Below the pieces are notes generated by a model, which saw nothing but the letters and a program-made list of their open reading frames with translations, was not told the origin of the DNA and did no database searches. This document shows, piece by piece, positions 13,383 to 35,364 of a stretch of 64,000 nucleotides of DNA. The position numbers and the translations under genes were made by a program. Each line of letters begins with the position of its first letter. Within the stretch, counting starts at the first letter, position 1. The stretch spans positions 1 to 64,000 of IMG/VR virus record IMGVR_UViG_3300046170_000519; one strand, written 5' to 3'.

Positions 13383-13467
13383 TTTATTTTTTTTCTTTTG
13401 AGTTTTTTTGAGCTTTTTAAAGACTTTTCATCAGGGTAATCTTTATCTCCAGGTTTAGCTGGTTTGT
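13379..13467. repeat. Direct repeat copy A (89 bp)
   Basis: Identical to 14156-14246 except T5 vs T7 in one homopolymer; includes the start codon of the methyltransferase gene. Confidence 0.95.
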
Positions 13468-14159: not shown

Positions 14160-14246
14160 TTTATTTTTTTTCTTTTGAGTTTTTTTGAGCTTTTTTTAAA
14201 GACTTTTCATCAGGGTAATCTTTATCTCCAGGTTTAGCTGGTTTGT
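14156..14246. repeat. Direct repeat copy B (91 bp)
   Basis: Covers the 3' end of ORF 14161-14745 and the ATG of the sulfotransferase-like gene. Confidence 0.95.
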
Positions 14247-20757: not shown

Positions 20758-21796
20758 CTTCTTTACTAATACCTAAAACTCTAGCCTTCCAGCTATCCAT
20801 TCTCTCAAGCGAATCAGCTTCTTCTTTTATTAATAATTTTTGTTTTTCTGCCATCTCTACCATTCTAGTTCTATCTTCTTCATTTTGAAACACCTTCACT
20901 AACGATAATATAGATGCATTATCTTTATGTTTATTTTTGACACGCTCTTTTCTATCACCATTTAAACGCGCGATTAATGTTTCTTGCCTCTTTTCGCATT
21001 GATTATATTCTTCGCTCTTTGTTTTTAATAATTCCGCTAATCTAACAGTCATATCTTGTTGGTCTTCACATTCTTCAAACATGCGATTTAATTTATCTAT
21101 TGCTTTACTGATATTTTTTAAATGTATATAATCCATACAAACATTTATATATAAATTTAATTCATCACTTGTTAAGTCTGGTTTATCCCATACAGATCTT
21201 ATATATTCAGCCTCAAAGAGTTTTCTATCATCTCCAGATGTATAAGTATTAATAACTTGAATAAAACGAGGAGCCGAAAGAAATTTCATCGAACTTTCTA
21301 AATTGTCTAAATCGCCTCTATTTAGCTTTTTTTCATCTAGATCCTCTTGGCAGTATTCATTTACCTTTTTAACTACCCTAGAGATTGATTTAGGGGCAAA
21401 ATATTGGCTATTTAAGGCTGTTTCTGAGGAATGTAATAACCTGAAGTCAACATCTTCGATGAATTTAGCAACCTCGGTAACTTCTTTACTTAAATTAGTT
21501 ACATTTATTTCTGGAAAAATAATTTTTGAAATTTCATAAGCCGTCATTCCTTCTTTCGCATATTGAATCATAAACTCTTTCTGTTCTTGAGAGAATGTTA
21601 TATCTTCTTTTTTTTCTTTTTTTGTTGTATTGTAATTTAACTCTCTATCAACCAAAAATTTTCTAACAGCTCTCCCCTCTTTTGTTCTTCCATCTAAGCT
21701 TTCATCATTGAATGTCAATCGGGTTAATTCTATTAGGTCAGGAACCCTATCATAATTCTCAATTATAAAATTAGCTTGTATTTCTGTAAGTTTCAT
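20747..21796 (-). CDS. Hypothetical helical protein, candidate terminase small subunit (349 aa)
   Basis: HTH-like N-terminus and coiled-coil C-terminus upstream of terL; function is inference only. Confidence 0.5.
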   Translation of the reverse strand: MKLTEIQANFIIENYDRVPDLIELTRLTFNDESLDGRTKEGRAVRKFLVDRELNYNTTKKEKKEDITFSQEQKEFMIQYAKEGMTAYEISKIIFPEINVTNLSKEVTEVAKFIEDVDFRLLHSSETALNSQYFAPKSISRVVKKVNEYCQEDLDEKKLNRGDLDNLESSMKFLSAPRFIQVINTYTSGDDRKLFEAEYIRSVWDKPDLTSDELNLYINVCMDYIHLKNISKAIDKLNRMFEECEDQQDMTVRLAELLKTKSEEYNQCEKRQETLIARLNGDRKERVKNKHKDNASILSLVKVFQNEEDRTRMVEMAEKQKLLIKEEADSLERMDSWKARVLGISKEDAI

Positions 21797-22524
21797 AATA
21801 TATCTTGTTTTTTAATCACTTGTTTTGCAATAATTTTAAATTGTTTTTCTGCATTTTTAATTTGTTTATAACCTGCAGATCTACCTTTTTCATTAGAGAT
21901 ATACCCTAATTTCTTAGCTATTTCATCATGTGGTAGATGAAGAATATAAAGCATTTCGTAAATTTTAAATTGCTTAGGGGTTAACTTGAGCTCCATAGCT
22001 TCATGCAATCTTTGAGCAGATAAATCTAAATTAAAACCATTAGAACATGTAATTCTATCTTCTTTATCTGTTATTGTGGCTGCCAAATTTATATCAAAAG
22101 AGCTTTTTTTTCCTACAAGCCATTTTTTATATAATGGACATGTTTTATCTTGGAGCCCCGATTTTGTCCAGCTGCAAAAATTTTCATTATCATTATAATT
22201 ATCTTGAGCTCCAGAAGAATTAAATGGACATTGAACACAGGGTTTAACAAAATTTCCATAATAATTTCTTAATAAATTTTTAAGCTGATTAGATATGATT
22301 CTATTCAACCATGGCTTCATAGGGCGTTTTTGATCCCACAAAGACCATTTTTTTTCAATATGCACTAATATTATTGACTTTATATCTTCCCACGATATCC
22401 AGCTAATGGCATTTAGAAACCACTTACCCCTCCTTTTCTCTACACAGGCTTCTACTTCTTCAAAACTCTCAATAAATGTTATTTTTCTAGGTCGTCCCCT
22501 CTTCTTCATTCTGTTTTGGCCCAA
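21793..22524 (-). CDS. Phage-encoded RNA polymerase sigma factor (ECF-like; 243 aa)
   Basis: Region-2-like EDIKSIILVHIEKKWSLWDQKRPMKPWLNRIISNQLKNLLR and region-4 HTH LTPKQFKIYEMLY...HDEIAKKLG. Confidence 0.75.
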   Translation of the reverse strand: MGQNRMKKRGRPRKITFIESFEEVEACVEKRRGKWFLNAISWISWEDIKSIILVHIEKKWSLWDQKRPMKPWLNRIISNQLKNLLRNYYGNFVKPCVQCPFNSSGAQDNYNDNENFCSWTKSGLQDKTCPLYKKWLVGKKSSFDINLAATITDKEDRITCSNGFNLDLSAQRLHEAMELKLTPKQFKIYEMLYILHLPHDEIAKKLGYISNEKGRSAGYKQIKNAEKQFKIIAKQVIKKQDIL

Positions 22525-23425: not shown

Positions 23426-24157
23426 TCAAGATTTTAATTCTTCTAGTTTTTTAACTATATATTTTAATATCTCGCTTCTTTTTATATCTTTATGATCAAA
23501 ATCAAAAGTATGTATCCCTTGCCTTTTAGAGCTTTCTTCATCAAAGAGTTCTTTAATTGGAGATAAACCACTCTTTCCGTTTATATCGCTTTGCATTATA
23601 TCTCCGCAAATAAACATTTTTGTGTTTTCTCCTATTCTCGTAATTAAAGTTACTAACTCTTTTAAACTGAAGTTTTGAGCTTCGTCGGCTATTACGATTT
23701 GATCGTTTAAGCTGGCTCCTCGTAAATAGTTGATTGGCATAGCTGTAATTACACCTTTGTCAACTAAATTTTTTGCTGTTGATATTGGTATTAACTCATA
23801 CAGTTTATCATTAAGCGGCATCATAAATGGGCAAAATTTCTCATCAACATTTCCTGGTAATGCGCCCATGCCCCTGTCAGCACTTTCAATGATTGTTCGC
23901 ACATAACTAATACTATAGTTATTATTCATATTAAATAATTGAAGAGCACCGTAAATAGCCATAAACGTTTTACTTGTTCCAGCAGGACCGTTTATAAAAA
24001 TTATCTTAGTATCTCTGTCAAATATTAACTTCAACAACTCTTGTTGTTTATCAGAAAAATCTATTTTTTTGAGCTTCACTTTTGTCTTAGACATGGAGCT
24101 CATGATTTTTTCTATTTCTTGATCGTCTTCTATTTCAGATTTTTTGCGTCTTGGCAT
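23426..24157 (-). CDS. phoH: PhoH-family ATPase (start revised to MPRRKK)
   Basis: GPAGTSKT Walker A, GALPG, YLRGASL, IADEAQN, GDIMQSD, DIKRS motifs. Confidence 0.93.
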   Translation of the reverse strand: MPRRKKSEIEDDQEIEKIMSSMSKTKVKLKKIDFSDKQQELLKLIFDRDTKIIFINGPAGTSKTFMAIYGALQLFNMNNNYSISYVRTIIESADRGMGALPGNVDEKFCPFMMPLNDKLYELIPISTAKNLVDKGVITAMPINYLRGASLNDQIVIADEAQNFSLKELVTLITRIGENTKMFICGDIMQSDINGKSGLSPIKELFDEESSKRQGIHTFDFDHKDIKRSEILKYIVKKLEELKS

Positions 24158-24373
24158 GTCTATCAAAGATATACTATATGATACACAATTAAAATTCAAG
24201 TGTCGCCGATTTTTTTTTGAAAAATGTTATTCACAAAAGATCGAAGCTTTGATTTTTTGAGAAAAACCACCCCCCCGCCAAATCTGTCAAGCTTAATCTG
24301 TAAAAAATTCAAAAAACGGGGGACATCCTTAAATTTTTAAAAATAAAAATAATAGTTTTTTTTTTGAATTAGT

Positions 24374-24408: not shown

Positions 24409-25117
24409 ATGAACATTACTAAAGGATTAAAAGTCGGAAGCCTTTACCACTCAAAGGTTAATAATAAAGTTGTTCGTCTCGTGTCTATCGACAGAGTCGG
24501 ATCTCAACGGATCGCAACGATCAAGCATCATGCGCAAAATCATCTTTTCGAGTCAGAGGTTTTTATCTCTGACCTAATCAAGGCAACTGCCGATCAAGTC
24601 AAGGCTTACTTTAAAAGGTAAGTCTTGACACAACACACAAGGAAAGGTAAAAAAGAAATGATTAAAATACTACGAAACCCTAACTTTTCAAATTGGTTTG
24701 ACATTCGCCTTTTTGGGGAACTAATAGACAACGCAAAATCACAAGCAAAAGCCTTGCAAATTGCAAAACAAATAAAACGAAACAATCCACATTTTCAAAT
24801 CGTAACAGAGGGAGAAACAAATGCGTAAAGTAACAGAAAGAATTAAACAAGCCTTTGAGCAAGGCACTTCTCTAAAGGTCGGCAACACAAGAACAGACGG
24901 CACAAGCGTCTTCTTGCATGGTAACGAGATAATCAAACGAGATGAAAGCGGGCTTGTAATGGCTACGCTTGCAGGATGGAACACGCCAACCACAAGGGAA
25001 AGAATCAACGGCATAACAGGATTGGGCATCTACCAAAAGAACTTTGCTCCTATGCTAAACGGGCAAGAAATTGACGAATACGATTGGGTGACGCATACAG
25101 AGGAGGTGTATGTATGA
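24409..25117 (+). CDS. Three small early genes (24409-24621, 24658-24828, 24821-25117), hypothetical
   Basis: Tightly packed co-oriented ORFs after a leaderless promoter; the third has the motif HGNEI...TLAGWNTPTTRERIN. Confidence 0.7.
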
Positions 25118-25175
25118 CTTGCATAATCCTCTTATCCATTGCATTATACTTCTACTCTAAATAAAATAAGCCGCC

Positions 25176-25248
25176 TAAGTGACTGAATAACAAGCACTTA
25201 GAGCGCGGCGCTGCCGCGTGACCTAAGTACTTAATAAACAACAACTTA
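25176..25248. repeat. Double-arm IHF-consensus element E1 (25+23+25 bp)
   Basis: TAAGTGACTGAATAACAAGCACTTA-gagcgcggcGCTGCcgcgtgacc-TAAGTACTTAATAAACAACAACTTA. Confidence 0.9.
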
Positions 25249-25364
25249 CGAAAGTCTCGTACAGAAATCATGCCAATTCATGTAATAGAATAATGCAATA
25301 AAATAGTTGCCAAATAATTCAAAATAAATTTGACTTTAGTTAATAGATGCTTTAGTTTATATAT

Positions 25365-26273
25365 ATGAAATCAATATACAATACAGACACAGAAGAATTT
25401 ACTTTTAACTTTTTAATGAGCATCGAGGGTGCAACTTATAGAATCGAAGCCGTAGCTTGTCAAGATGACATCTTGCTGAGCGAACAATATCGTCCCGAAT
25501 ATATCGACGTTTATATGGCTAAATTAATAAATGACAAAACAGGTGAATTTATAGAATCAAGCATCTATAAAAACACAGATCTTTTAAAGGTTGTGAGCGA
25601 CAAGCTCACAGAAAGGCTAATTACAAATGCAAGCAAAACTTGGTTTGTTACTGATGCGCCAAGGCTTTTCCGTGAGCAATTCGACACTTGCCTTGAAATA
25701 ATGTTTCAAAAATAATTCAAAATAAATTTGACAAAAGTTAAAAAATAGACGATAGTAAGGTATGACAGAAATAAAAATAGAATTCGACGAAGTAAACAAT
25801 GAAGAGTTTTCCGCCTATGCTGAAGTAGGCGAGGAATACTACGAACTGCAAGGCACAACATGGACAGATGAGCAAGAGTCTCTTTATGGAGATCAAGTCT
25901 CAGCCGTTCACTTAGTGGCTTACTTTGATACTCTTGAAAGCGTGAAGCGCTTCGATGGCAACGGCAAACAAATTGATTCAATGAACTTGGATCTTATCAA
26001 AGCAATTAAAAAAGAACTTAATAAAAACATGGATGAAGAGATAGGATCACACTCTTGCCGTGTTGACTACTCGCCACAATACTACGACCTAATCTAATCA
26101 TGGAATACATAAAAAACACGATCAACAAATTAAGAACTCAAATCATGGCATTGAATAGCGAAAGAATCAAGGCAATGAAATTGAACAATAAAAAGAAGGC
26201 TTCAGACATTGAAGCTATACAAATAGAATTAGACAATCAAATAGCACGATTGGAAGGTCTCGCACACCGATAA
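25365..26273 (+). CDS. Early genes 25365-25715, 25762-26097, 26100-26273, hypothetical
   Basis: Leaderless promoters TTGACT-17-TAGTTT-6-ATG and TTGACA-17-GATAGT-5-ATG, each preceded by the identical 23-mer aaataattcaaaataaatttgac; the last ORF (57 aa) was translated by hand. Confidence 0.75.
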
Positions 26274-26284
26274 GATCAGCCCCC

Positions 26285-26357
26285 TAAGTTACTGATAACC
26301 AAGCACTTAGGTCAGGGCGCCGCGCTGCGCTGTAAGTGCTTAATAAGCAACTACTTA
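26285..26357. repeat. Element E2 (25+23+25 bp)
   Basis: TAAGTTACTGATAACCAAGCACTTA-ggtcagggcGCCGCgctgcgctg-TAAGTGCTTAATAAGCAACTACTTA. Confidence 0.9.
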
Positions 26358-26455
26358 TATAACTCCATAAATCTAGTTTAAAATTGCATAATCCCGCCAC
26401 CACTAAAAAGTTGCACTATTTGACTATTTGGTATTTAAATAAAAAAACAAAAAAA

Positions 26456-27236
26456 ATGAAAATAAATCCGTATTTGCTTGCAAAACACGCACTACTAGTT
26501 TACCTTGTTTTTATGGATAAGATCAGAATCAATCATGTAATCGGAGTCAATGGACTTCTTGAATTTTCACGCGACGAAAAGTCGGGCATATCCCTGTGGG
26601 AAGATGTTGCAAATAATGTTTGGACTTGGGATCAAATAGTCGAAGCATCTAAAGATGTAACAAATAAAGAAATCATCGACGCCATGAAAGTAGATGGACA
26701 CATCACTGAGCCATGCGTAAATGATCTTTTAAATATACTAAAATAAAATTTGCAATTATATCATAACTCGTTTACCTTATATATATGAAAGCTAATACAG
26801 ACACCATCTCAATCGTTGACCTAATCGAAAACGAATCATATAAAAATCACCAAGCTTACAACTTAGCAAAAGCTCTCTTGGACATTGCGGTTCAAGCAAG
26901 ATCCATAAAAAACACAGTTTCAGAAAACATTTCAGGCGATGGAAAAGTGTTCAATGAAAATGTTGATAAATGGATGACCGAAATCAACAACATTGCAAAC
27001 AATGTGGTAAGGGAAGAAATGTTAACCAAATAAGGAGGGAATAAAATATGAATAAACAACAAATACTAGAAAAAATTTCCGCCCTTCACGAAAAACTCAA
27101 GAACTCTGTTCTTGCTCCTGCTGATGCCGTTGCTATCCGCAATGAAATCGGAGAGCTTGAGGATAAGGTCTCTCTTCTCGACTTTTACAACGACGAAGGG
27201 GATTATGATTATGGCTACCACTCCCAATGGGAGTAA
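26456..27236 (+). CDS. Early genes 26456-26746, 26785-27033, 27048-27236, hypothetical
   Basis: 26785 has TTGCAA-17-TACCTT-6-ATG; 27048 has an SD (aggagg). Confidence 0.7.
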
Positions 27237-27305
27237 GCCTTTGATAATCAACTACTTACATCGCCGCGCAGCCAAGCACCTAAGTGCTTGGCAGTCAACA
27301 ACTTA
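27234..27305. repeat. Element E3 (25+22+25 bp) at the convergence point
   Basis: TAAGCCTTTGATAATCAACTACTTA-catcgccgcGCAGCcaagcacc-TAAGTGCTTGGCAGTCAACAACTTA; both ends are stop codons of converging genes. Confidence 0.92.
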
Positions 27306-27716
27306 CTCTTCTAGTAGCCATGCATCGAGAGCTTCTGTGTCGATGTCTGGGTCATCATATTGAGCCCCATCAGGTGTGGACTCGAATCCATATTCAACTT
27401 TAAGATGTTCAACTAAATCTTTATAATATGCAAACCTGCGAGATAAAAAATAAAGATGTTCATCATTCCCTAACCAAAGAGCAACATTCCAGGTCGCCCA
27501 GTTTTTCCAGCCGTTGTAAGTATCCATAATTTAATAAACGAGTTGTGAGTTAATAGCTAATTGATCAATCATATCTTGAATATGTTCTTTTTCATTTTCT
27601 GCATTGATTACTAACTGCATCGAGTTAATACAACCTTGATCTGCGGCATCTGTCTCATTGTTAATAATCTGCTGAAGTTCGTTAATTCTGTTAAATAAAT
27701 CTTTTAATGTTTCCAT
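27303..27716 (-). CDS. Early genes 27303-27527 and 27531-27716, hypothetical
   Basis: Leaderless promoter TTGCAA-17-TATCTT-6-ATG(27716); first has the motif NGWKNWATWNVALW. Confidence 0.75.
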
Positions 27717-27759
27717 GATAGTAAGATAATTAAAAATAGAAATAATTGCAAGAAAAAAA

Positions 27760-27966
27760 TTAAAATTTTAATGCTTTTAGCGATGTGTTTCTTTTTAACC
27801 ATCTACGCAATGGGTGAAATGCTCTTGCACTAAAATGAGCGAGATACTGCTCTCCGTTTTTGGCAAGGATCATATGCCCGCTTGCAGTTTCACGGATCTT
27901 TTCGATTTCAGGGCATTTCCGTAATTGTTTTAACACTTTGCGAGTTCCACTTTCTGAATGTTTCAT
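27760..27966 (-). CDS. Small basic protein, possibly HicA-like (68 aa)
   Basis: Leaderless promoter TTGTGT-17-TAGCTT-6-ATG; RETASGHMIL...H pattern. Confidence 0.6.
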   Translation of the reverse strand: MKHSESGTRKVLKQLRKCPEIEKIRETASGHMILAKNGEQYLAHFSARAFHPLRRWLKRNTSLKALKF

Positions 27967-28027
27967 AAGTACAAGCTAAAGCAAAAAATAAAAATACACA
28001 AGAAAAAAGTGAATAAAAATGCTTTCG

Positions 28028-28100
28028 TAAGTCTTTGATTATAAAGCTTTTAAGGGTTAACGCAGCCGACTGCCCTAAGTGCTTGATAATCAACTACTTA
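28028..28100. repeat. Element E4 (25+23+25 bp)
   Basis: TAAGTCTTTGATTATAAAGCTTTTA-agggttaacGCAGCcgactgccc-TAAGTGCTTGATAATCAACTACTTA. Confidence 0.92.
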
Positions 28101-28300
28101 GGACAGCCACACATGCAGACTACGACAACTAATACGACTAAAAAATTATTTGCGAGTTTTCGTATTTGCTATTTTTAGTTTTAATCTTTTGTATATATAT
28201 ATAATAGTATTGACAAGATAATAATTATTGGAATCATTCTTCTTTTAAATCTTGCCACATTAAGTAAAAAACAAAAAGCCAAGGAGTGAAAAATAATAAT

Positions 28301-28984
28301 TCAACTATCATAATATATTCCTTTCATTTCATCGGATAATCCGATTTCTTCATCTTCCTCATCAACATCTTCAGCGACATCAGTAAGTAAGAATTGAGTT
28401 TCATCTGTAATGTCATCTCTCTCGACATCTTTTAATCCATGCTCGACAACTAATTGTTCTGCTTGTAAGTCTGCGACTAATTCTAATACTGAGGAATCAG
28501 TTGGCAAACCTTTGGATTCACGATGTGCGTTAGCGATAACTGCGAGTCTTTGTTCTTCTGTCATAGTAATAATATAGTTTAGTTTTGTTTAGTCGTCAAG
28601 CCCTAATTCTCTTCTAAATTCTGCTTTGTCTTCAATTAGCTCATCAACCCAAACGCTTCCTTCGACTTGAGCTTTTGCCATTAGGATAGATACTTGAGCA
28701 GGAGATTGCCAACCGACAACATCATCAGAAGGAGAAAGAGGAATCATGCCGTTTTTATCGTAGATTGCAACTTCGTACAAACCTTCTTTTAAGCTTCCAT
28801 ATAATCCTTTATAGTCATCTTTACCTGCAATAACAGAAATTTCTAGTCCGTTGCCAAAGTCAAGTTTTGCATGGACTGCTTCATCATGATAACGATGTGG
28901 TTTAAAATCAAGATCGTCAAAGTCTAGCATTGAAGGTTTTGGTTGAAATTGTGAGATTGAGTTTGGTATGTCGTAGTTAATCAT
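28301..28984 (-). CDS. Early genes 28301-28564 and 28589-28984, hypothetical acidic proteins
   Basis: Each has a leaderless promoter (TTGACG-17-TATATT-6-ATG; TTGCGT-17-TAATGT-6-ATG). Confidence 0.8.
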
Positions 28985-29046
28985 ATAAACACATTAAACT
29001 CTTTTAACAATTAACGCAAGAAAAAACTTAAATAAAAATGCTTTCG

Positions 29047-29118
29047 TAAGTCGTTAACTGTTAGGCAGTTAGCTTTGGCGGCAGCCAGCCACCTAAGTGA
29101 TTGACTATAAAGGATTTA
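29047..29118. repeat. Element E5 (25+22+25 bp)
   Basis: TAAGTCGTTAACTGTTAGGCAGTTA-gctttggcgGCAGCcagccacc-TAAGTGATTGACTATAAAGGATTTA. Confidence 0.88.
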
Positions 29119-29119
29119 C

Positions 29120-29890
29120 CTATCTTAATACTGTTGTCAACTCATTTTGAAATTTTTTTGCTTCAACTAAATCTTTTAAGTCAAAACTAATTGCAACAAG
29201 ATTGTCGTTAATATTCTTCATTACCTTGACAAGGTCGTCCATGTTTGCATAACGTCTATGCTCTAACATCTCATCTGATAATCCGTCAATGGCTTGTTTA
29301 ATTCCTTTTAATTCTTCTTTCATTTTAATGTTTACCTTTCTTTATAAAATTTTCTAAATAATATGCAACCCACTCAATAGCTTCATTTTGTTTTGATGCC
29401 TCCTCTTTCATTTCAGGATCGTCAATAACGTTTTGATTGGCTAGGTCTAATACAATTTCTAATGCTGTTGTGATATTCATGATATATAAGCTGTTACTTT
29501 GTTGTGTGTTAATAAAACTTCGTCCGCATAGTACGCAAACCTTTCGGTGTCCTTCTCAACGAAAGTTTCATACTTGTAGGGATTGTACGTTACCTCGACT
29601 TCCCTAGTGGCAACTTGTGGATTACGAGATACATTTTCTGCATCTTGAAGATACCCTTTGACAAAAGCATGAACATTCTTACGCTTCTCTCGAAGAACTT
29701 TTTCTCTGCCCTTAATATCGACATGAAAATAGCAATCCCATAATCCAATAGCATGATCCTTTGGGATATGAGCTTTGACTAATCCATGTTGCTTAATGCT
29801 CCAACAATCTTTGTGAAGATTCTTGTAAACATAAACAGGGCGATTCTTTTTAATTCTATATCGTGGGTCTTGCTGGTTTCTTAGTATCAT
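29120..29890 (-). CDS. Early genes 29120-29323 and 29477-29890 (a short ORF probably lies between), hypothetical
   Basis: 29890 has TTGCTA-17-TAGTAT-6-ATG; motif VYVYKNLHK...KRKNVHAFVKG...VTYNPYK. Confidence 0.75.
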
Positions 29891-29952
29891 GTAGACATAC
29901 TAAGCCATTTTTTTAATTATAGCAAGAAAAAAGTTTAGTAATTTTACTTACC

Positions 29953-30024
29953 TAAGTATCTTGTATTCAAGTACTTATGTTTTTGCGCAGCCGCCGCCAC
30001 AAGTGCTTGATAATCAAGGCTTTA
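29953..30024. repeat. Element E6 (25+22+25 bp)
   Basis: TAAGTATCTTGTATTCAAGTACTTA-tgtttttgcGCAGCcgccgcca-CAAGTGCTTGATAATCAAGGCTTTA. Confidence 0.9.
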
Positions 30025-30201
30025 GTACCCTAACCACTCAAGAACTTTTTGGGCTGAGTACCCTTCCTTGTCACCCATGTCTTCAAAAAATTCAATAATT
30101 TCCTCACTGGAAGTAATGCCGTGCCTGGCTAATTCCTCTAAGGCACGATCTTGTGAAATGTCAATTCCTTGGGCTGAGTCAAAATAAGTTTCTTCATTCA
30201 T
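30022..30201 (-). CDS. Hypothetical acidic protein (59 aa, below the ORF-track cutoff)
   Basis: MNEETYFDSAQGIDISQDRALEELARHG...QKVLEWLGY*; its stop is the last 3 bp of E6. Confidence 0.7.
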   Translation of the reverse strand: MNEETYFDSAQGIDISQDRALEELARHGITSSEEIIEFFEDMGDKEGYSAQKVLEWLGY

Positions 30202-30216
30202 GGCTTTAATTATAGA

Positions 30217-30942
30217 TTAATGAGCTAAATATGCAATACCTTTTTTGCATCCTTTGATAAAACATAAGTTGCAATTATGAGCTTTACAAGTTGCAAGAAC
30301 CTTGCCGTCTTCGCCCTTAACATAAGTTGCGGGGCAAACAAAATGACCATCTTGCTCGGCTTGCTCTTTTGAGCTATAGACGGAAGTTCCCGCATCTAGA
30401 CCATCGATTTGTGGAGCGGGTTCATCAACATACAAGGCACTTGGTTTTAAGCATACATTCTTTAAACTTGCGAGCTTGCGAAGTGAAGGTAATTGACTAT
30501 CCCTTGCCCACTCACGAGTTGGAAACCAAAAGCGAATGGTGGGAAAGTTTTCGCAAATCTTAATCCACGCCTCAATATACTTTGGGGAAAACAAGTCGCC
30601 TGAATCATGAACGCGAAAAAGATCTGTGTTGACATTCTTTAAAACTTTTTTGTTGCCTTGCTTGTCAAAATACTTTGCGGTAATTTGCTTGGATATCTCA
30701 TTTACAAAAGTTTGCCCATTGTCTCGATGCAAAGACTTGGTGACAAAATTTGCCTTGTCTTGCAAACTTTGTTTAACATTGTTAAACATATAAAAACCTT
30801 TGCAAGCATAACAAGCATCACAAATAAACTTTTTTGCTTTGTCTTTGACTTTTGCCATAAGTTGAGCTGCTGGGCAATACTTGAAAGCGGGAATGTTAAA
30901 GCCTAAGCAAGGCATTTTAGAAGGATTTGATAGTAAGTTCAT
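30217..30942 (-). CDS. Gp88-like phage protein (241 aa)
   Basis: SKMP...CP...CDACYA and FRVHDSGDLF...FWFPTR motifs; leaderless promoter TTGCAT-17-TAGTTT-6-ATG. Confidence 0.65.
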   Translation of the reverse strand: MNLLSNPSKMPCLGFNIPAFKYCPAAQLMAKVKDKAKKFICDACYACKGFYMFNNVKQSLQDKANFVTKSLHRDNGQTFVNEISKQITAKYFDKQGNKKVLKNVNTDLFRVHDSGDLFSPKYIEAWIKICENFPTIRFWFPTREWARDSQLPSLRKLASLKNVCLKPSALYVDEPAPQIDGLDAGTSVYSSKEQAEQDGHFVCPATYVKGEDGKVLATCKAHNCNLCFIKGCKKGIAYLAH

Positions 30943-30969
30943 AATAGTAAACTAAAATAATTTTAACAA

Positions 30970-31170
30970 TTATGCAAGCGAAAAAATAAGATCTTCAAAG
31001 AAATCTGGTTCTAAGCCGAATTCGCTGGTAAATGTCTCTTCCCATTCAAACGGATCTCCGCCCATTGCAATGTCTTCAGACATTTCACGAAAAAAGGTTG
31101 CGGTTTGGTGAATAGCATCTTCACGGGAAAGCCCGTCACGCTCCATAAGTATCTTGATTATTCTTTTCAT
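30970..31170 (-). CDS. Hypothetical protein (66 aa)
   Basis: TTGCGT-17-GATATT-6-ATG; motif ILMERDGLS...EFGLEPD. Confidence 0.75.
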   Translation of the reverse strand: MKRIIKILMERDGLSREDAIHQTATFFREMSEDIAMGGDPFEWEETFTSEFGLEPDFFEDLIFSLA

Positions 31171-31231
31171 GATAACAATATCTCACAAAAAATAATTTAA
31201 CGCAAGAAAAAATGAATTAAAAATACATCCG

Positions 31232-31303
31232 TAAACCCTTGATGCTTAAGCAGTTAGCTCGCGCCGCAGCCGCTTCCATAAGTGCTTAATAATCAAATAC
31301 TTG
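31232..31303. repeat. Element E7 (25+22+25 bp)
   Basis: TAAACCCTTGATGCTTAAGCAGTTA-gctcgcgccGCAGCcgcttcca-TAAGTGCTTAATAATCAAATACTTG. Confidence 0.88.
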
Positions 31304-31322
31304 TGAAACACTAAATCAACCC

Positions 31323-31350
31323 AAAAAAAAAGCCCCCCAATCGGGGGGCT
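31323..31350 (-). terminator. Rho-independent terminator
   Basis: agcccccc-aatc-ggggggct hairpin with a 9-nt U-tract on the minus strand. Confidence 0.9.
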
Positions 31351-31373
31351 AAAACGAAACAACAAACCAATAT

Positions 31374-32246
31374 TTAAACCTCTATCAATTCGCCCTCAGC
31401 AACTTCTATGTCAATAGTATTATCAACATGATTATCTATATCGAAATCGACATAACTATCGAGAACAGAATGAAGAGCGTCTGAACGATTTGGCAAGGCA
31501 ACTAAGTTACCTTTATAAATTTCAGTAAAAGCATTATAGAGAGAATTTACATTACGATCCTTAAATTCTAAATGGTCACTTGACTCCCATTGATCTGCCA
31601 CATCAAGAATTTTTGACTTAGGTAAAGCCCCTGCACGAACTGCTTTGATGATTAAATCATGAGCAAGAACATTCCCGATAGAATGATTTTTATAAGCATT
31701 GATTCTTTCATCTTGTCCATGCCAAAAGCCAAACAATTTACCCAAAGCACGATTGATCATAAAATCAAGATCGTTAAGTATGTTGCGAGTATGTCTACGA
31801 GCAAGTTTAATAGTGTTTGTGAAAATTAAATTATCGCAAACAAATGGAGCATCACCTGCGCAAAGTCCTGCAGGAAAAGTTTTGTCATGAGAATTGCGAA
31901 CTCCTACGACACAACCACGATCTGATTCGTCACGATCAGGATGATCAACAGAGAATAGACCAAAGTAATGTTGGTTATCTCTAGCGAGAGAATGTAATTC
32001 GTCTTGAATAGTAAACCCTCTCTTGACAAGAGAATCTTTAGTACGAACAACAAGCTCGTCATGAGCAATGGGCTGATGAGAAACGGCAAGCTCACCTGTT
32101 CTCTTGTTTGGTTTGTTGCGCATTGTAGGTAATGGAGTTGGTACTGCTTGTACTTGATCAAAATCTACGATTGTGCGATTGCCTCCACAAATGTGTAAAT
32201 CTACGGATTTGCGAGGAGCGGTATTAGTGTTTTCTTCTGTATTCAT
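31374..32246 (-). CDS. DUF932-family protein (290 aa)
   Basis: YFGL...VGVRNSHDKTFPAGLCAG...FVCDNLIF...RRHT motif; TTGACA-17-TATATT-6-ATG. Confidence 0.7.
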   Translation of the reverse strand: MNTEENTNTAPRKSVDLHICGGNRTIVDFDQVQAVPTPLPTMRNKPNKRTGELAVSHQPIAHDELVVRTKDSLVKRGFTIQDELHSLARDNQHYFGLFSVDHPDRDESDRGCVVGVRNSHDKTFPAGLCAGDAPFVCDNLIFTNTIKLARRHTRNILNDLDFMINRALGKLFGFWHGQDERINAYKNHSIGNVLAHDLIIKAVRAGALPKSKILDVADQWESSDHLEFKDRNVNSLYNAFTEIYKGNLVALPNRSDALHSVLDSYVDFDIDNHVDNTIDIEVAEGELIEV

Positions 32247-32284
32247 GATAGTAATATAATAGTTTTAATGTTTTTTGTCAAGAG

Positions 32285-32518
32285 TTAATTTTTAGAATAT
32301 TGGTTTTCTTCTGAGGTTAGCATTTCAAATGCATAAGCTTTTTTAGCTATATCTCGTAAGGCTAAACCAACCCAACTAATTTCATCTAAATCTTCTACGG
32401 AAAGATTTTTAGCATGAGGTGTTACTAGAATATCCCAAATGGATTTCATGCAATCTTTGTTTAGCTCTAAAGAGTTGAAATCGGGCAACTCATCCACATT
32501 TTGTTTAATTACATACAT
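32285..32518 (-). CDS. Hypothetical protein (77 aa)
   Basis: ORF track; SD aaggag upstream. Confidence 0.65.
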   Translation of the reverse strand: MYVIKQNVDELPDFNSLELNKDCMKSIWDILVTPHAKNLSVEDLDEISWVGLALRDIAKKAYAFEMLTSEENQYSKN

Positions 32519-32633
32519 AGTTTAGATTCTCCTTGTGTTTTAGTTTTCTGTGTATCGTTTTAGTTTTGACTTTGTGAGGTCTTGATTTAGTGAAAAGAAT
32601 GGTTTTTCTGATCTTAATGTCTCTCGCTTTCAT
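32505..32633 (-). CDS. Very basic 42-aa peptide, ArfA-like pattern
   Basis: MKARDIKIRKTILFTKSRPHKVKTKTIHRKLKHKENLNYVCN*; dedicated promoter TTGCTA-17-TAGTAT-6-ATG. Confidence 0.65.
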   Translation of the reverse strand: MKARDIKIRKTILFTKSRPHKVKTKTIHRKLKHKENLNYVCN

Positions 32634-32696
32634 GTAAACATACTAAGCTAATTTTTTAATTATAGCAAGAAAAATAACAAATAATTTTAACTTTTT

Positions 32697-32768
32697 TAAT
32701 TCCTTGTGTATCAAGCACTTAGAGCGCGCGGCAGCCAGCCACATAAGTGACTGATAATCAAAAGGTTA
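32697..32768. repeat. Element E8 (25+22+25 bp)
   Basis: TAATTCCTTGTGTATCAAGCACTTA-gagcgcgcgGCAGCcagccaca-TAAGTGACTGATAATCAAAAGGTTA. Confidence 0.9.
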
Positions 32769-32927
32769 TGATCTACCTGAATAAAGCTTATATAATAGAT
32801 TGTCGTGCATCGCTCTTTTTTCCTTATAATCTTTCGATTGGTCCCCCGCTTGCTCTCTAATGGCTAGCATGTGACCTAATTTTCTTACAATTTGCTTTAA
32901 GGTTAAGACTTCTTTATTTTTTTTCAT
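32766..32927 (-). CDS. Hypothetical protein (53 aa, below the ORF-track cutoff)
   Basis: MKKNKESLTLKQIVRN...LYKLYSGRS*; its stop is the last 3 bp of E8. Confidence 0.6.
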   Translation of the reverse strand: MKKNKEVLTLKQIVRKLGHMLAIREQAGDQSKDYKEKRAMHDNLLYKLYSGRS

Positions 32928-32929
32928 AA

Positions 32930-33160
32930 TTAGATTTTATTAAGAGATATAATTTGGTCGTATCGAAAGGATCGTATGCCGTCCCTATTTAGACAAAAAG
33001 ATCTAAAGCCAACAACCCCCCTTCCTTCTTGTTGATTGCCAAACTCATTTTCGTGCTGAGGTTTGGTTATTGTGTACATTTCAGTTCTGCCGTCTTTAGT
33101 CTGATAAACAACTTGATATAACGGATTAAACCAACGATAAATTTTAGTCAATAATTTCAT
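32930..33160 (-). CDS. Small WYL-like (SH3-fold) protein (76 aa)
   Basis: VVYQTKDG...GFRSFCLNRDGIRSFRYDQI resembles the WYL RxFRxDRI signature. Confidence 0.5.
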   Translation of the reverse strand: MKLLTKIYRWFNPLYQVVYQTKDGRTEMYTITKPQHENEFGNQQEGRGVVGFRSFCLNRDGIRSFRYDQIISLNKI

Positions 33161-34205
33161 CTTCGACATCCTCTCTTGCGGGGTTTTGGTTGTAGTGATT
33201 GTAAGCATCGCAAGCTGAATCTGCCGACTCGAAACTCACGGATAGAATATCTCTTGGAATATCGTACGGAAACCAAGGTGTTTCTGATTCTTCAAAAAAT
33301 AATTCCCATTGCTCAGTATCTTCGTTGTATTCAGGTAAATCTAGCGGACTGCCGATGCAGGTTGCTTCTATGTAATTATTCATTTTCATTATCCTCTATG
33401 TTATAGACTCCGAAGTGAGACGCAAGCTCTAAAATCATTTTATCTTTGTTAAAATAACGATAGGCAAAAGAAAGTAAATCCTCTTGTTGTTTTCTCGTAT
33501 GCCCATCTCTAAGTTCATCATAAATCTCAAAGATATTCATGTTCCAATTCCAACTCTCTACTCTCGCTTCTACTTGTGATGCTGTCATTATACTGCCCTT
33601 TCGTTTACTTGTTCTAACATAAGTTTAAATTGATCAAAAACTTTTTGCTTGCTACCTTTGAGACCAAACTCTTGTTTGATGATAGAATAGCAAGATCTGC
33701 CTCGACTCATTTGCATACCTAAAGTCTCAAGCCTTAAACCTCTGAGAAGAGTTTTGTAGCGAAACATTTCGATTTGTTCGGGTGTGTCTAATACTGCTGT
33801 CATAATTTTCCTTGTGTTATAGTTGTGCTGATTGAAAAGATGATTCTATTCTACGTTCATCTTGTAATGCTGTCAAGTCCCTAATGATATCTTCTAAAGA
33901 TTCATCCTCCGATTGGAATGAGCTACCCTTCGGGAACTTGTCAGGGTGGCGTTCGCATTGGTCGAGACAAACTGTTGACATGGGATCCGACCATGCGAGG
34001 TTGCCTCTAACGATATCCATAATTGATTCTGATAATGTCATTGTTTTGCCCTTTCGTTTTGGTCGTCTACAATCTTTGCGAGGCGAAGTAATTCTTGGGT
34101 TACTTCTGCTTTTGCGGTGTTGTTTGCTTGTGGGCTTTTCAACACCTCGACCATAACAGGAACGAGTGCTGACCATGTTGGTGTGATATCTATTGTTTCT
34201 TGCAT
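33144..34205 (-). CDS. Early operon of small hypothetical genes: 34038-34205, 33817-34041, 33588-33803, 33376-33588, 33144-33389
   Basis: Leaderless promoter TTGACA-17-TAGTGT-6-ATG(34205); ATGA overlaps couple the genes. Confidence 0.7.
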
Positions 34206-34266
34206 ATAAACACACTAAGGGAATTTTTAGTTGCTGTCAAATAAAAAGAAAATAAAAATGCTTTTG

Positions 34267-34339
34267 TAAGTTGTTGAATTTTAAGCAGTTAGGGTTTATC
34301 GCAGCGCTCCGCTTTAAGTGCTTGACTATCAACACTTTA
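34267..34339. repeat. Element E9 (25+23+25 bp)
   Basis: TAAGTTGTTGAATTTTAAGCAGTTA-gggtttatcGCAGCgctccgctt-TAAGTGCTTGACTATCAACACTTTA. Confidence 0.9.
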
Positions 34340-34704
34340 TACAATCACCTTGTTCCTAACATTACTTAATAATTCTTCATAATTTTTATTATATTTATAT
34401 TATTTGTTATTTATTATTTGTTATTATTTATACTAATGTTATTTATTATATATCCAGGACTGGGTAGTAATTTATTATTTTGGTAATACATATTATCCCA
34501 TGTACATTCTATTTGATATGCGTCAAGATACCAAGGTATTAACCAATGGTAAGCAAGAAAGAATGCAAAATATATAAAAATAAACATAAAAAAATAATTT
34601 ATTATTTTAAATGAGAATTTAAGAATCATAATCCATAAGTAATTTAAAACCAAGAACGATAGACATTATTATCACTATTTCCATATTATATATTGTTATT
34701 ATTG

Positions 34705-34959
34705 TTATTTGGCTATAGCAAAAACTGTTCTTAAGAGATCCATCTCTCGACCCCTGAAGAAAACATTACGACAGTAATCGATATCGTTTTTTTCTACTTC
34801 AGTGATGCGAGCAGCTGCCCTCCAAGCTTCGATAACCTCTCTCTCCATGGCTCCCCACTTAATAACTACTTTAGTGCAGGGAAAGTGCTCTGCGAGCTCA
34901 GTTAACTGTTTTTTGTTCATATAACCATATGATGATAGAATTTCTTTTATTGTTTCCAT
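34705..34959 (-). CDS. Hypothetical protein (84 aa)
   Basis: TTGACC-17-TAGAGT-6-ATG leaderless promoter. Confidence 0.75.
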   Translation of the reverse strand: METIKEILSSYGYMNKKQLTELAEHFPCTKVVIKWGAMEREVIEAWRAAARITEVEKNDIDYCRNVFFRGREMDLLRTVFAIAK

Positions 34960-34995: not shown

Positions 34996-35035
34996 CAAAA
35001 AAGCCCCCCTCGATCATCCATGGATCGAGGGGGGC
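34996..35035 (-). terminator. Strong Rho-independent terminator after the candidate ncRNA
   Basis: gcccccctcgatc-atccatg-gatcgaggggggc 13-bp stem, U-tract on the minus strand. Confidence 0.9.
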
Positions 35036-35052
35036 GAGTGTTCAGAGGAAAT

Positions 35053-35240
35053 TGGTGTGGGGAGGGATTACTGTATACCCTCAAGTTTTCGGCGTGAACA
35101 TCAGTTCATGGTGTACCTACTTCCAACCACAAATTAGACATGGTATTTGTCATCGGCTCATTCGATTGAACTCTACCGCCCCACCACAGGGAATTTGCAT
35201 ACCTTAACCCGCTCACGACAGGTTTATTCGGTCACCCACA
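35053..35240 (-). ncRNA. Candidate tRNA-like structured RNA (~188 nt, 3' ACCA)
   Basis: TATAAT 6 nt upstream; 5' GUGGG pairs with 3' CCCAC-A-CCA; T-arm-like GAGGG/CCCUC; several internal hairpins; terminator downstream; no ORF. Confidence 0.65.
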
Positions 35241-35364
35241 GGAAGGATTATAAGCCCTTCCAAAGTGATAAAAAATATTAAAGAACAAAAATTTTGAGGC
35301 TATTTTATTTATTTGAGTCGCCTCTTCTCAATCATGGATGATACTTACTATAATACTAAAAAAA

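What the first reader, a model, noticed from the sequence alone, without database searches (positions are those of the whole stretch)
25176..34339. Nine copies of a 72-73 bp element with four IHF-consensus sites punctuate the early region
Seen: E1-E9 share a fixed 25 + 22/23 + 25 bp geometry. Each 25-bp arm is an imperfect palindrome (best copy TAAGTGCTTGATAATCAACTACTTA) that equals two inverted 13-bp matches to the E. coli IHF consensus WATCARNNNNTTR sharing one central base. Arm centres are 47-48 bp apart (~4.5 helical turns). The elements occur only in the 25-34 kb early region. Six (E4-E9) end about 25-35 bp upstream of an early promoter's -35 box; E3 sits at the convergence point. Established: IHF bends DNA sharply and scaffolds site-specific recombination, promoter activation and packaging complexes. 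Inference: a dispersed nucleoprotein platform that could be early-promoter enhancers, an IHF/HU sponge, a DNA-entry pacing signal, or recombination sites for shuffling small genes (functionally like T4-type PeSL repeats or integron attC sites). I know no named element with this architecture.
Basis: partly seen in the sequence, partly recalled or inferred. Interest (0 to 1): 0.88.

Follow-up and report, generated by a model that had tools for sequence, protein, structure and literature searches.

The report
Double-palindrome boundary repeats in a phage
Nine copies of a conserved 73-bp double palindrome mark the ends of small gene units in the variable early region of an uncultured phage; they look like protein-binding boundary sites, and relatives gain, lose and swap gene cassettes at them, as T4-type phages do at their PeSL cassettes.

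Summary
Nine 72-73 bp elements (25-bp arm, 22-23 bp GC-rich spacer, 25-bp arm) lie at the stated coordinates and nowhere else in the 64 kb. The same element occurs in related uncultured phage contigs. There are 92 distinct copies in 29 loci, usually 6-10 per ~10 kb. Arms are always 25 bp and spacers 21-23 bp, with a fixed central GCNGC. No full copy was found in bacterial genomes, Rfam or the searchable literature.

The invariant arm bases (TAA..TTG..CAA..TTA) coincide with the key bases of the IHF consensus. Pairing shows no covariation, which favours recognition as double-stranded DNA by a dyad-symmetric protein over an RNA hairpin.

The elements are polar and sit at gene ends, often supplying the stop codon. 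A quarter lie between convergent genes. E4-E9 are fused at a fixed 61-63 nt to a promoter for a leaderless mRNA. Promoters occur without elements and elements without promoters, so the element is a boundary module, not an obligatory enhancer.

Relatives differ by whole cassettes whose junctions are chimeric elements, at varied crossover points. This matches PeSL-type homologous shuffling, not site-specific recombination.

Verdict: a new variant of a known kind. The binding protein and host are unknown.

The parts
25176..25248 (+). E1: 25 + 23 + 25 bp element, sense orientation +. Class II downstream context (conserved CGAAAGTCTCGTACA.., next ATG 116 nt away).
26285..26357 (+). E2: 25 + 23 + 25 bp element, sense orientation +. 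Lies 11-12 nt after the stop of 26100-26273.
27234..27305 (.). E3: element between convergent genes. Its first TAA is the stop of 27048-27236 (+). Its last TTA is the stop of 27303-27527 (-). Contains a local perfect hairpin CCAAGCAC/GTGCTTGG. Orientation ambiguous.
28028..28100 (-). E4: element holding the best arm copy (28076-28100).
27967..28027 (-). Class I promoter module fused to E4: AT-rich tract, TTTTTTCTTG -35, 17 bp, TAnnnT -10, 6 nt, then the ATG of 27760-27966 (leaderless by geometry).
29047..29118 (-). E5: element, 1 nt after the stop of 29120-29323.
28985..29046 (-). Class I promoter module fused to E5 (62 nt to the ATG of 28589-28984).
29119..29885 (-). Variable cassette (three small genes: 29477-29890, 29325-29480, 29120-29323) bounded by the E6 and E5 units. 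Absent from relative L030, which has one E5-left/E6-right chimeric element instead.
29953..30024 (-). E6: element whose terminal TTA is the stop codon of 30022-30201.
29891..29952 (-). Class I promoter module fused to E6 (62 nt to the ATG of 29477-29890).
31232..31303 (-). E7: element, preceded in the sense direction by a canonical intrinsic terminator.
31171..31231 (-). Class I promoter module fused to E7 (61 nt to the ATG of 30970-31170).
31331..31350 (-). Canonical intrinsic terminator (8-bp GC stem plus T8) between gene 31374-32246 and E7. Shows that the element is not the phage's ordinary terminator.
32697..32768 (-). E8: element whose terminal TTA is the stop codon of 32766-32927.
32634..32696 (-). 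Class I promoter module fused to E8 (63 nt to the ATG of 32505-32633).
34267..34339 (-). E9: element, the last copy in the cluster.
34206..34266 (-). Promoter module fused to E9 (TTGACA, 17 bp, TAGTGT, 6 nt, ATG). It points to the 55-aa ORF 34038-34205 as the first gene, not the GTG start at 34215.

Best explanation
The 73-bp elements are the boundary module of duplicated regulatory cassettes. These cassettes divide the phage's variable, presumably early, region into units of one to seven small genes.

Shown:
- Each element lies at the 3' end of a unit, is co-oriented with transcription, and often supplies the stop codon.
- In E4-E9 the element is fused at a fixed distance to an AT-rich tract and a sigma-70-type promoter for a leaderless mRNA. 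This gives a repeated unit of about 135 bp.
- Related phages differ by insertion, deletion and replacement of the cassettes between elements, with chimeric elements at the junctions.

Inferred:
- The element works as double-stranded DNA. Each 25-bp dyad arm is bound by one dimer of a DNA-bending protein. An IHF/HU-type protein of the host or the phage is the simplest candidate, because the invariant bases are the mirrored CAA-N4-TT of the IHF consensus.
- The two bends, 46-48 bp apart, flank a stiff GC-rich core with a fixed central GCNGC.
- The resulting compact complex marks and insulates the end of a transcription unit in either direction, as a roadblock or topological barrier, and in the fused copies may also help the next promoter.

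Because the copies are 65-80% alike and equally oriented, ordinary homologous recombination between them shuffles the cassettes. This is a by-product that evolution exploits, as with PeSLs.
For: Reality and confinement:
- Nine copies occur in the window and none elsewhere.
- On the 205,857-bp contig that contains the window, the search pattern hits only this region.

Family and geometry:
- 92 distinct copies occur in 29 viral or metagenome loci.
- In the 90 aligned, the arms are always 25 bp without indels and the spacer is 21-23 bp. Eleven columns are invariant, including the G of the central GCNGC.

DNA-level recognition:
- Whole-element hairpin pairing is no better than column shuffles, and in fact lower: 496 of 500 shuffles reach the observed value.
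- Arm-hairpin pairing is not significant (40 of 500).
- Arm positions 6 and 7 are non-complementary in 83 and 66 of 90 copies of the promoter-proximal arm.
- Folding energies are modest and the predicted structures are inconsistent between copies.
- Canonical GC-stem/T-tract terminators exist alongside the elements, one directly upstream of E7.
- The IHF consensus is enriched about 66-fold inside the elements.

Boundary role:
- In 50 of 90 copies a sense ORF stops within -3 to +13 nt. In 19 the arm's own TAA is the stop. In 24 a convergent ORF ends at the other arm.
- Class I promoters occur without elements.

Shuffling:
- L030 lacks the three-gene cassette 29119-29885 and has an E5-left/E6-right chimera.
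- L025 joins the E4-side gene to the E6-side gene through one element.
- Seven mosaic breakpoints fall in or at the edges of elements.
- PeSLs in T4-type phages behave the same way (PMC2839356, PMC4122927).
Against: - No binding protein is identified. A regex for the HU/IHF signature finds nothing in the window.
- The host is unknown, so it is not known whether it has IHF.
- The IHF consensus is short and AT-rich. Only 13 of 36 half-sites match exactly.
- The family also conserves bases that the consensus leaves free (G4, T5, G6 of TAAGTG and the mirrored CACTTA). A different, more specific protein may therefore be the reader of the site.
- One base pair flanking the promoter-distal arm does covary (46 Watson-Crick pairs against 31 expected). 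This hints that the arm sometimes pairs with itself.
- In an unrelated 42%-GC contig (L002/L019), a related motif is the base of a canonical GC-rich terminator hairpin with a T tract, followed by a promoter. An RNA-level origin or role is therefore not excluded.
- The insulator or roadblock function is pure inference.
Confidence: 0.45

Rival explanations
1. RNA-level element. The transcribed palindrome folds into a long imperfect hairpin. It acts as a terminator or attenuator, a 3'-end stabiliser (REP-like), or an RNase III-type processing site between units (like the T7 early RNase III sites).
For: - Position immediately after stop codons and polarity with transcription.
- About 69% of the proposed pairs are standard pairs.
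- Several copies fold with z about -3 to -5.
- The L002/L019 variant is a canonical terminator built on the same inner half-sites.
- PeSL stem-loops are proven terminators (PMC2839356).
- One flanking pair covaries.
Against: - No covariation beyond column composition for either fold.
- No T tract follows the element; the nearest is 8-9 nt away.
- Mismatches are consistent in the stems.
- The sense strand pairs slightly worse than the antisense strand (74.6% against 78.2%).
- Predicted structures differ from copy to copy, and one has z=+0.5.
- Canonical terminators are used next to the elements.
- No Rfam family matches at E<=1.
Confidence: 0.2
2. Upstream activating sequence only. IHF-type bends centred about 75 and 122 bp upstream of the start bring upstream DNA to RNA polymerase and boost the early promoters.
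For: - Fixed 61-63 nt from element to ATG in E4-E9, and in 34 of 90 family members.
- An AT-rich tract lies between the element and the -35 box.
- Enrichment of the IHF consensus.
Against: - Class I promoters occur without an element upstream of 27531-27716 and 30217-30942.
- E1 and E2 lie 98-116 nt from the next ATG.
- E3 and 24 of 90 family members sit between convergent genes with no promoter.
- The fixed distance is explained equally well by duplication of the composite unit.
Confidence: 0.1
3. Selfish or mobile palindromic repeat (MITE- or REP-like). It spreads by transposition or template switching and has no function for the phage. The cassette shuffling is incidental.
For: - Small size, terminal inverted symmetry, TA-rich ends, many dispersed copies, intergenic location.
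- The elements diverge faster than neighbouring genes between close relatives (44-84% against 90-100% identity).
Against: - No transposase or RAYT-type gene was seen in the window.
- No clean empty-site/filled-site pair or target duplication was found.
- Strict confinement to one region.
- Constant orientation relative to genes.
- Eleven invariant positions and rigid arm length kept across divergent phages.
- No copies in the sampled bacterial genomes.
Confidence: 0.1
4. Site-specific recombination site (integron attC-like, or an att site with flanking IHF bends around a GC core) used by a dedicated recombinase to capture and excise gene cassettes.
For: - Cassettes are bounded by elements.
- The layout of a GC core with a fixed GCNGC flanked by two IHF-like sites recalls IHF-assisted recombination sites.
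- The L030 chimera switches parent near the centre of the element.
Against: - Seven mapped breakpoints are scattered: alignment columns -7, 34, 58, 84 (three times) and 90.
- No recombinase was identified among the proteins searched.
- There is no structure-preserving covariation of the attC type.
- Other exchanges in the same region use repeated promoters or gene bodies, not elements.
Confidence: 0.05
5. Titration 'sponge' for host IHF/HU, or a pacing signal for DNA entry.
For: Only the clustering of many consensus-like sites in the presumably first-expressed region.
Against: - Eighteen arms cannot titrate an abundant nucleoid protein.
- Regular placement at gene ends and polarity with transcription are not needed for either role.
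- Nothing is known about which end of the genome enters first.
Confidence: 0.03

Closest known systems
PeSL (promoter-early stem-loop) regulatory cassettes of T4-type phages (Arbiol et al. 2010, PMC2839356; Comeau et al. 2014, PMC4122927)
   Same: - Repeated ~100-135-bp intergenic units in a hyperplastic region of small orphan genes.
- A palindromic module lies directly after the upstream stop codon, followed by an AT-rich tract and a sigma-70-type early promoter.
- Cassettes flanked by two units in one phage are replaced by a single chimeric unit in a relative.
- Crossover points vary within the unit.
   Different: - PeSL stem-loops are simple G/C-rich hairpins shown to terminate transcription. 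Here the palindromic module is a rigid 25 + 21-23 + 25 bp double dyad with sequence-specific invariant bases, no T tract and no covariation.
- It also occurs alone between convergent genes.
- The promoters here give leaderless mRNAs, whereas PeSLs carry a Shine-Dalgarno sequence.
- The phage is not recognisably T4-type.
BIME-1 / RIP (RIB) elements of E. coli: two inverted REP palindromes flanking an IHF site (from my own knowledge; not checked here)
   Same: - Dispersed intergenic mosaics at the 3' ends of operons, frequent between convergent genes.
- They combine GC-rich palindromes with IHF binding.
- Proposed roles are in supercoil management, mRNA 3' ends and recombination.
   Different: - The order is inverted: here two AT-rich IHF-like dyads flank one GC-rich core.
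- The elements here are phage-borne and confined to one region.
- There is no sequence similarity, and no full copy in the sampled bacterial genomes.
RNase III processing sites of the T7 early region (from my own knowledge; not checked here)
   Same: Sequence-conserved imperfect hairpins of about 60 nt between early genes, co-oriented with transcription, directly after coding regions.
   Different: - T7 sites lie within one long transcript without intervening promoters.
- Here most elements are followed by their own promoter.
- Pairing is poorly kept, especially on the sense strand.
Integron attC sites
   Same: Imperfect palindromes of 57-141 bp at the 3' end of each mobile gene cassette, with conserved ends and a variable middle.
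   Different: - attC is conserved in structure rather than sequence and recombines at one fixed point through an integrase.
- Here sequence is conserved, junctions are scattered and no integrase was seen.

Membership tests
PeSL regulatory cassettes | Repeated composite intergenic motif concentrated in a hyperplastic region of small orphan genes | tested here: met
   - Nine copies lie in 9 kb of small genes, mostly without family matches.
- Relatives carry 6-10 copies per ~10 kb.
PeSL regulatory cassettes | Sigma-70-like early promoter with an upstream AT-rich tract inside the motif | tested here: met
   E4-E9 and 34 of 90 family members carry TTTTTTCTTG(-35)-17-TAnnnT at a fixed distance. This rests on sequence only; promoter activity was not tested.
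PeSL regulatory cassettes | Stable stem-loop that terminates or attenuates upstream transcription | tested here: inconclusive
   - A palindrome is present.
- It has no T tract, modest and inconsistent folds and no covariation.
- A canonical terminator precedes E7.
PeSL regulatory cassettes | Cassette flanked by two motifs in one phage, replaced by one chimeric motif in a relative | tested here: met
   - Window compared with L030: alignment A1.
- Window compared with L025: alignment A2.
PeSL regulatory cassettes | Host genome is a T4-type myovirus | tested here: inconclusive
   - rIIA, rIIB, PhoH and a Kyanoviridae Gp96 domain are present.
- The structural ORFs searched have no PHROG match.
- The terminase resembles Bacillus and Clostridium phage terminases at 22-26% identity.
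IHF binding site | Match to WATCARNNNNTTR | tested here: met
   - 13 of 36 half-sites match exactly and 14 have one mismatch.
- Enrichment over the rest of the window is 66-fold.
- The family-wide invariant bases coincide with CAA and TT.
IHF binding site | Specific binding and sharp bending by IHF of the host | not testable with these tools
   Needs a gel shift or footprint. The host is unknown.
Intrinsic (Rho-independent) terminator | GC-rich hairpin immediately followed by a T tract | tested here: not met
   - The consensus scan reports no terminator-like site with a T tract at any element. The only element hit is a weak 5-pair stem in E1's spacer with no T run.
- It does find the two canonical terminators nearby.
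- The sequence after the elements is CGAAAGC.., TATAAC.. and similar.
Integron attC | Structure conserved with covariation, and recombination at one fixed point by an integrase | tested here: not met
   - No covariation.
- Scattered breakpoints.
- No recombinase among the proteins searched.
REP/BIME or other bacterial intergenic repeat | Many copies in a bacterial chromosome | tested here: not met
   The 120 pattern hits in genome contigs are at about the number I calculate for chance matches. None is a full element by profile search.
Any Rfam RNA family | Covariance-model match | tested here: not met
   No match at E<=1 in 24800-34800.

The most novel reading that the evidence does not exclude
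The element is a dedicated protein-DNA boundary device, not a hairpin. Two dyad sites, each wrapped by one IHF/HU-type or phage-encoded dimer, flank a rigid GC core. Together they form a bidirectional, sequence-specified insulator that ends transcription units or blocks supercoil spread without an RNA terminator. This device would have been recruited as the standard junction for exchanging early-gene cassettes in a lineage of marine phages.
Probability: 0.25. Interest if true: 0.75.

Novelty: new variant of a known kind. Interest (0 to 1): 0.5.

Why it matters
The finding extends PeSL-type modular shuffling beyond T4-type coliphages and vibriophages. In that process, small regulatory cassettes both organise expression and serve as exchange points for orphan genes. 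Here it appears in an unrelated, uncultured and apparently marine lineage of large phages.

The finding also shows a version in which the palindromic half looks like a rigid, sequence-specific protein platform rather than a terminator hairpin. If a nucleoid protein or a phage factor binds it, it would be a compact, portable boundary element. That would be of interest for how phages insulate densely packed early units, and possibly useful as a synthetic-biology part.

The 92-copy alignment gives a ready motif for finding this phage lineage and its variable regions in metagenomes.

Tried and rejected
1. Canonical terminator. Rejected: there is no T tract and canonical terminators lie nearby.
2. 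Whole-element RNA or DNA hairpin and arm hairpins. Tested on 37 and then 90 distinct copies. No covariation was found beyond column composition, and an unbiased mutual-information scan shows no pairing diagonal. RNAalifold gave no consensus structure on either strand.
3. Bacteroidota-type promoters. This was my first reading. I dropped it after seeing TTGACA -35 boxes and AGGAGG ribosome sites for internal genes.
4. Host repeat family. The genome-contig scan gave only chance-level hits.
5. Known RNA family. None matched.
6. Literature search for the core motif and for IHF-type phage intergenic repeats. Nothing relevant was found.
7. Phage-encoded reader of the site.
   - A regex for the HU/IHF signature found nothing in the window.
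   - The most conserved basic early protein (27760-27966, 68 aa) has no Pfam or PDB sequence match.
   - Its model (pLDDT 71, helix, three strands, helix) has no significant structural neighbour. I thought it looked HicA-like, but that remains unconfirmed.
   - The protein 24409-24621 also gave nothing.
8. Fixed central crossover. Rejected because the breakpoints are scattered.
9. A repeated AAAGTTGCAC motif near E2. It is not above chance.
10. Host identification through cultured relatives. The terminase, helicase and rIIA have only distant matches, and the 689-aa ORF 14754-16823 has none.
11. GCNGC avoidance outside the elements. The total count equals the shuffle expectation, so there is no clear signal.

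Full report
**1. The observation**

A repeat search of 24-36 kb returns families of direct and inverted repeats that all belong to one element. Each has a 25-bp arm, a 22- or 23-bp GC-rich spacer and a second 25-bp arm.

The quoted best arm is present exactly at 28076-28100. Four places match it with up to three mismatches, against none in 100 shuffles. A profile built from the nine copies finds those nine places and nothing else in the 64 kb, even at E<=10.

Each copy scores 67-77 bits in one orientation and 24-47 in the other. The spacer carries an asymmetric motif (CGCAGCC on the + strand in E3-E9, its complement in E1 and E2). The elements are therefore polar, and their polarity follows the direction of the flanking genes. 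E1 and E2 lie among rightward genes, E4-E9 among leftward genes, and E3 at the convergence.

**2. The IHF claim**

Of the 36 half-sites, 13 match WATCARNNNNTTR exactly and 14 have one mismatch. Match density is 19.8 per kb inside the elements and 0.30 per kb outside. The formal observation holds, but no single copy has four exact sites. The two sites of one arm overlap, so at most one dimer per arm could bind.

**3. What the window is**

The window is part of a large uncultured phage.
- It has a large terminase subunit, rIIA, rIIB, a helicase, PhoH, an HNH endonuclease and a tRNA-Cys.
- It has no close relative among 50,697 deposited phage genomes.
- GC content is about 32%.
- The 24-34 kb stretch holds about 30 small genes, almost all without family assignment.
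- It is 100% identical to part of IMG/VR contig 3300046170_000519, which is 205,857 bp long.

The host is unknown. A manA RNA motif and the names of the metagenome records suggest a marine or estuarine origin.

**4. Position and context**

On the leftward strand the elements cut the region into units of one to seven genes.
- E5 starts 1 nt after a stop codon.
- In E6, E8 and on both sides of E3, the terminal TAA/TTA of an arm is itself the stop codon.
- E4-E9 are followed at a fixed 61-63 nt by an ATG. Between them lie an AT-rich tract, TTTTTTCTTG as the -35 box (TTGACA in E9), 17 bp, a TAnnnT -10 box and 6 nt. By geometry the transcripts are leaderless. The repeated unit is therefore about 135 bp: element plus promoter.

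The two parts are separable.
- The same promoter type precedes 27531-27716 and 30217-30942 without an element.
- E1 and E2 are 98-116 nt from the next ATG.
- E3 has no promoter.
- Two textbook terminators (GC stem plus T run) lie at 31331-31350, directly upstream of E7, and at 35003-35035. The phage therefore uses ordinary terminators as well. The elements lack a T tract.

**5. The family outside the window**

A degenerate pattern of the two inner half-sites was scanned against IMG/VR, metagenome contigs and one genome per prokaryotic species. Profile search of the fetched loci then separated real elements from chance hits.
- In viral and metagenome contigs there are 124 hits, 92 of them distinct, in 29 loci. 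Typical density is 6-10 per ~10 kb: L167 has 9, L169 has 10 and L277 has 9.
- The 120 hits in bacterial and archaeal genomes are about as many as I calculate for chance, and none is a full element.
- On the 205-kb contig the pattern hits only the window's region. Four of the nine window copies match the pattern, so a second cluster of similar size would very probably have been seen.

In an alignment of 90 distinct copies:
- both arms are 25 bp in every copy, with no indel;
- the spacer is 21 bp in 28 copies, 22 bp in 41 and 23 bp in 21;
- eleven columns are invariant: A2, A3, T9, A17, T23 and T24 of one arm, A2, A3, T9 and A17 of the other, and the G of a central GCNGC;
- the central GCNGC sits at position 35 of all nine window copies.

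**6. Structure or sequence?**

I tested two folds on 37 and then on 90 distinct copies: the whole element as one hairpin, and each arm as its own hairpin.
- About 69% of cells form standard pairs in both folds, but this is what the column compositions give by themselves.
- For the whole hairpin, 496 of 500 shuffles reach or exceed the observed pairing, and 493 of 500 the covariation score.
- For the arm hairpins the figures are 40 and 53 of 500. The tool's own notes put this within what unconstrained alignments give.
- Positions 6 and 7 of the promoter-proximal arm are non-complementary in 83 and 66 of 90 copies.
- An unbiased mutual-information scan shows no pairing diagonal.
- Only the base pair that flanks the promoter-distal arm covaries: 46 Watson-Crick pairs against 31 expected.
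- Minimum free energies of the window copies are modest. They range from -16.7 to -34.5 kcal/mol for about 97 nt, with z from +0.5 to -5.3. The predicted structures differ between copies.
- The sense strand would pair slightly worse than the antisense strand, 74.6% against 78.2%.
- No Rfam family matches.

Together this favours recognition of a conserved dyad sequence in duplex DNA over a selected RNA or DNA fold. The invariant bases are the mirrored CAA-N4-TT of the IHF consensus. The family also conserves G4, T5 and G6, which the consensus leaves free.

**7. Where the family sits in genomes**

Among the 90 copies:
- 50 have a sense-strand ORF stopping within -3 to +13 nt of the distal arm, and in 19 of these the arm's TAA is the stop;
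- 24 have a convergent ORF ending at the other arm;
- 34 have the class I promoter at the fixed distance;
- 11 have the E1-type downstream sequence.

The constant feature is the end of a transcription unit, in either direction. It is not a promoter.

**8. Cassette exchange**

Relatives are mosaics of the window.
- L030 has gene 30022-30201, one element, then gene 28589-28984. The window has E6, a promoter, three genes and E5 between those two genes. The L030 element is E5-like on its left and E6-like on its right (alignment A1).
- L025 joins the gene next to E4 to the gene next to E6 through one element (A2).
- Seven pairs of elements are over 90% identical on one side and under 60% on the other. 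Their switch points are at alignment columns -7, 34, 58, 84 (three times) and 90, that is, inside or at the edge of the element but not at one point.
- Between close relatives the elements, especially their spacers, diverge faster than the neighbouring genes.
- Other exchanges in the same region use repeated promoters or gene bodies. For example, gene 25365-25715 is 68-88% identical in L042 amid roughly 92-100% identical flanks.

This is the behaviour described for PeSL cassettes of T4-type phages. In those, an orphan gene flanked by two PeSLs in RB49 is replaced by a single PeSL in phi1, and crossovers occur at different points of the motif (PMC2839356; PMC4122927).

**9. A possible distant variant**

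Contigs L002 and L019 have 42% GC and no protein similarity to the window. They carry four copies of a unit made of the same inner half-sites flanking a GC palindrome, followed by a T run and a GCTTGAC promoter. That is a canonical terminator plus promoter. It may be convergent or may show the ancestry of the element. Either way, it keeps an RNA-level role on the table.

**10. Explanation and rivals**

Best supported: the elements are the boundary module of PeSL-like cassettes. The position, polarity, fusion to promoters and role as exchange points are shown. Recognition as duplex DNA by a dyad-symmetric bending protein, one dimer per arm, and an insulating or roadblock function are inferred. 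Confidence is 0.45.

Rivals:
- an RNA hairpin acting as attenuator, 3' stabiliser or RNase III site (0.2);
- a pure promoter enhancer (0.1);
- a selfish repeat (0.1);
- an attC-like site (0.05);
- a sponge or entry-pacing signal (0.03).

**11. Comparison and novelty**

The composite unit works like a PeSL and meets three of its five defining features. The stem-loop/terminator feature and the T4-type host genome are inconclusive. In layout the element is the inverse of E. coli BIME-1/RIP, which has an IHF site between two REPs (my own knowledge, not checked here).

The rigid double dyad with IHF-like invariant bases, the central GCNGC and the use between convergent genes are not described in anything I could search. 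I rate it a new variant of a known kind, of moderate interest. The interest would rise if a specific binding protein and an insulator function were demonstrated.

**12. Limits**

- No binding, transcription or recombination was measured.
- The host and two thirds of the phage genome were not available.
- The family was collected with a pattern anchored on the inner half-sites, so conservation of those 18 bases is partly built in.
- Many of the 90 copies are orthologues, so counts are not independent.

Noticed in passing
window 35052-35261 (-): A full-length manA RNA motif (Rfam RF01745, 88 bits against a gathering score of 55). A strong intrinsic terminator follows it at 35003-35035. The motif is known from marine bacteria and phages (my own knowledge), so this hints at a marine host.
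   Followed up: no
window, many genes, e.g. upstream of 27531, 27760, 28589, 29477, 30217, 30970, 31374, 44714, 45171, 46801, 47039, 58574, 62015, 62527: A -35 box (CTTGAC or TTCTTGC), 17 bp and a TAnnnT -10 box end 6 nt before the ATG, with no Shine-Dalgarno sequence. By geometry these genes are expressed from leaderless mRNAs. Genes inside operons do have AGGAGG-type ribosome sites. The same geometry holds in relatives.
   Followed up: partly
window 25365-25715 (+) compared with L042: The body of this 116-aa gene is only 68-88% identical to that of an otherwise roughly 92-100% identical relative. Its promoter and the next promoter are essentially identical. This is a gene-body swap or rapid diversification between repeated promoters (AAATAATTCAAAATAAATTTGAC at 25312 and 25710).
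   Followed up: partly
window 13383-13422 and 14160-14199 (-): Two adjacent, unrelated genes (12807-13382 and 13485-14159) are preceded by nearly the same ~36-nt A-rich sequence (AAAAAGCTCAAAAAAACTCAAAAGAAAAAAAATAAA). This may be a second class of repeated regulatory sequence in the non-early part.
   Followed up: partly
window 34340-34700: Next to E9 lies an extremely AT-rich, repetitive stretch (TTATT-type runs). It overlaps a very hydrophobic 79-aa ORF with a TTG start (34414-34653). It is unclear whether this is a membrane protein gene or non-coding DNA.
   Followed up: no
window 28101-28300: A 200-bp stretch between E4 and the stop of 28301-28564 has no ORF of 40 aa or more on the sense strand. 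It contains a TTGACA-type promoter-like site on the + strand (28210). It could hold a small RNA or a very small gene.
   Followed up: no
window 27760-27966 (-): The most widely conserved small basic protein of the region (68 aa, 61-97% identical in five relatives). It is predicted as helix, three strands, helix (pLDDT 71). It has no Pfam, PDB sequence or structural match. The order of secondary-structure elements recalls HicA-type proteins, but this is unconfirmed.
   Followed up: yes
window 21793-22524 (-) and 23426-24199 (-): A weak match to a phage sigma-factor family (E 5e-5) and a clear PhoH-like ATPase lie just left of the variable region. Gene 24821-25117 carries a Kyanoviridae Gp96 domain.
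   Followed up: no
L002 and L019 (IMG/VR contigs 3300006802_002899 and 3300025818_001121): An unrelated 42%-GC phage carries four terminator-promoter units. The base of each hairpin is the same ATCAAG..CTTA / TAAG..CTTGAT motif as the inner half-sites of the element. A T run and a GCTTGAC promoter follow.
   Followed up: partly
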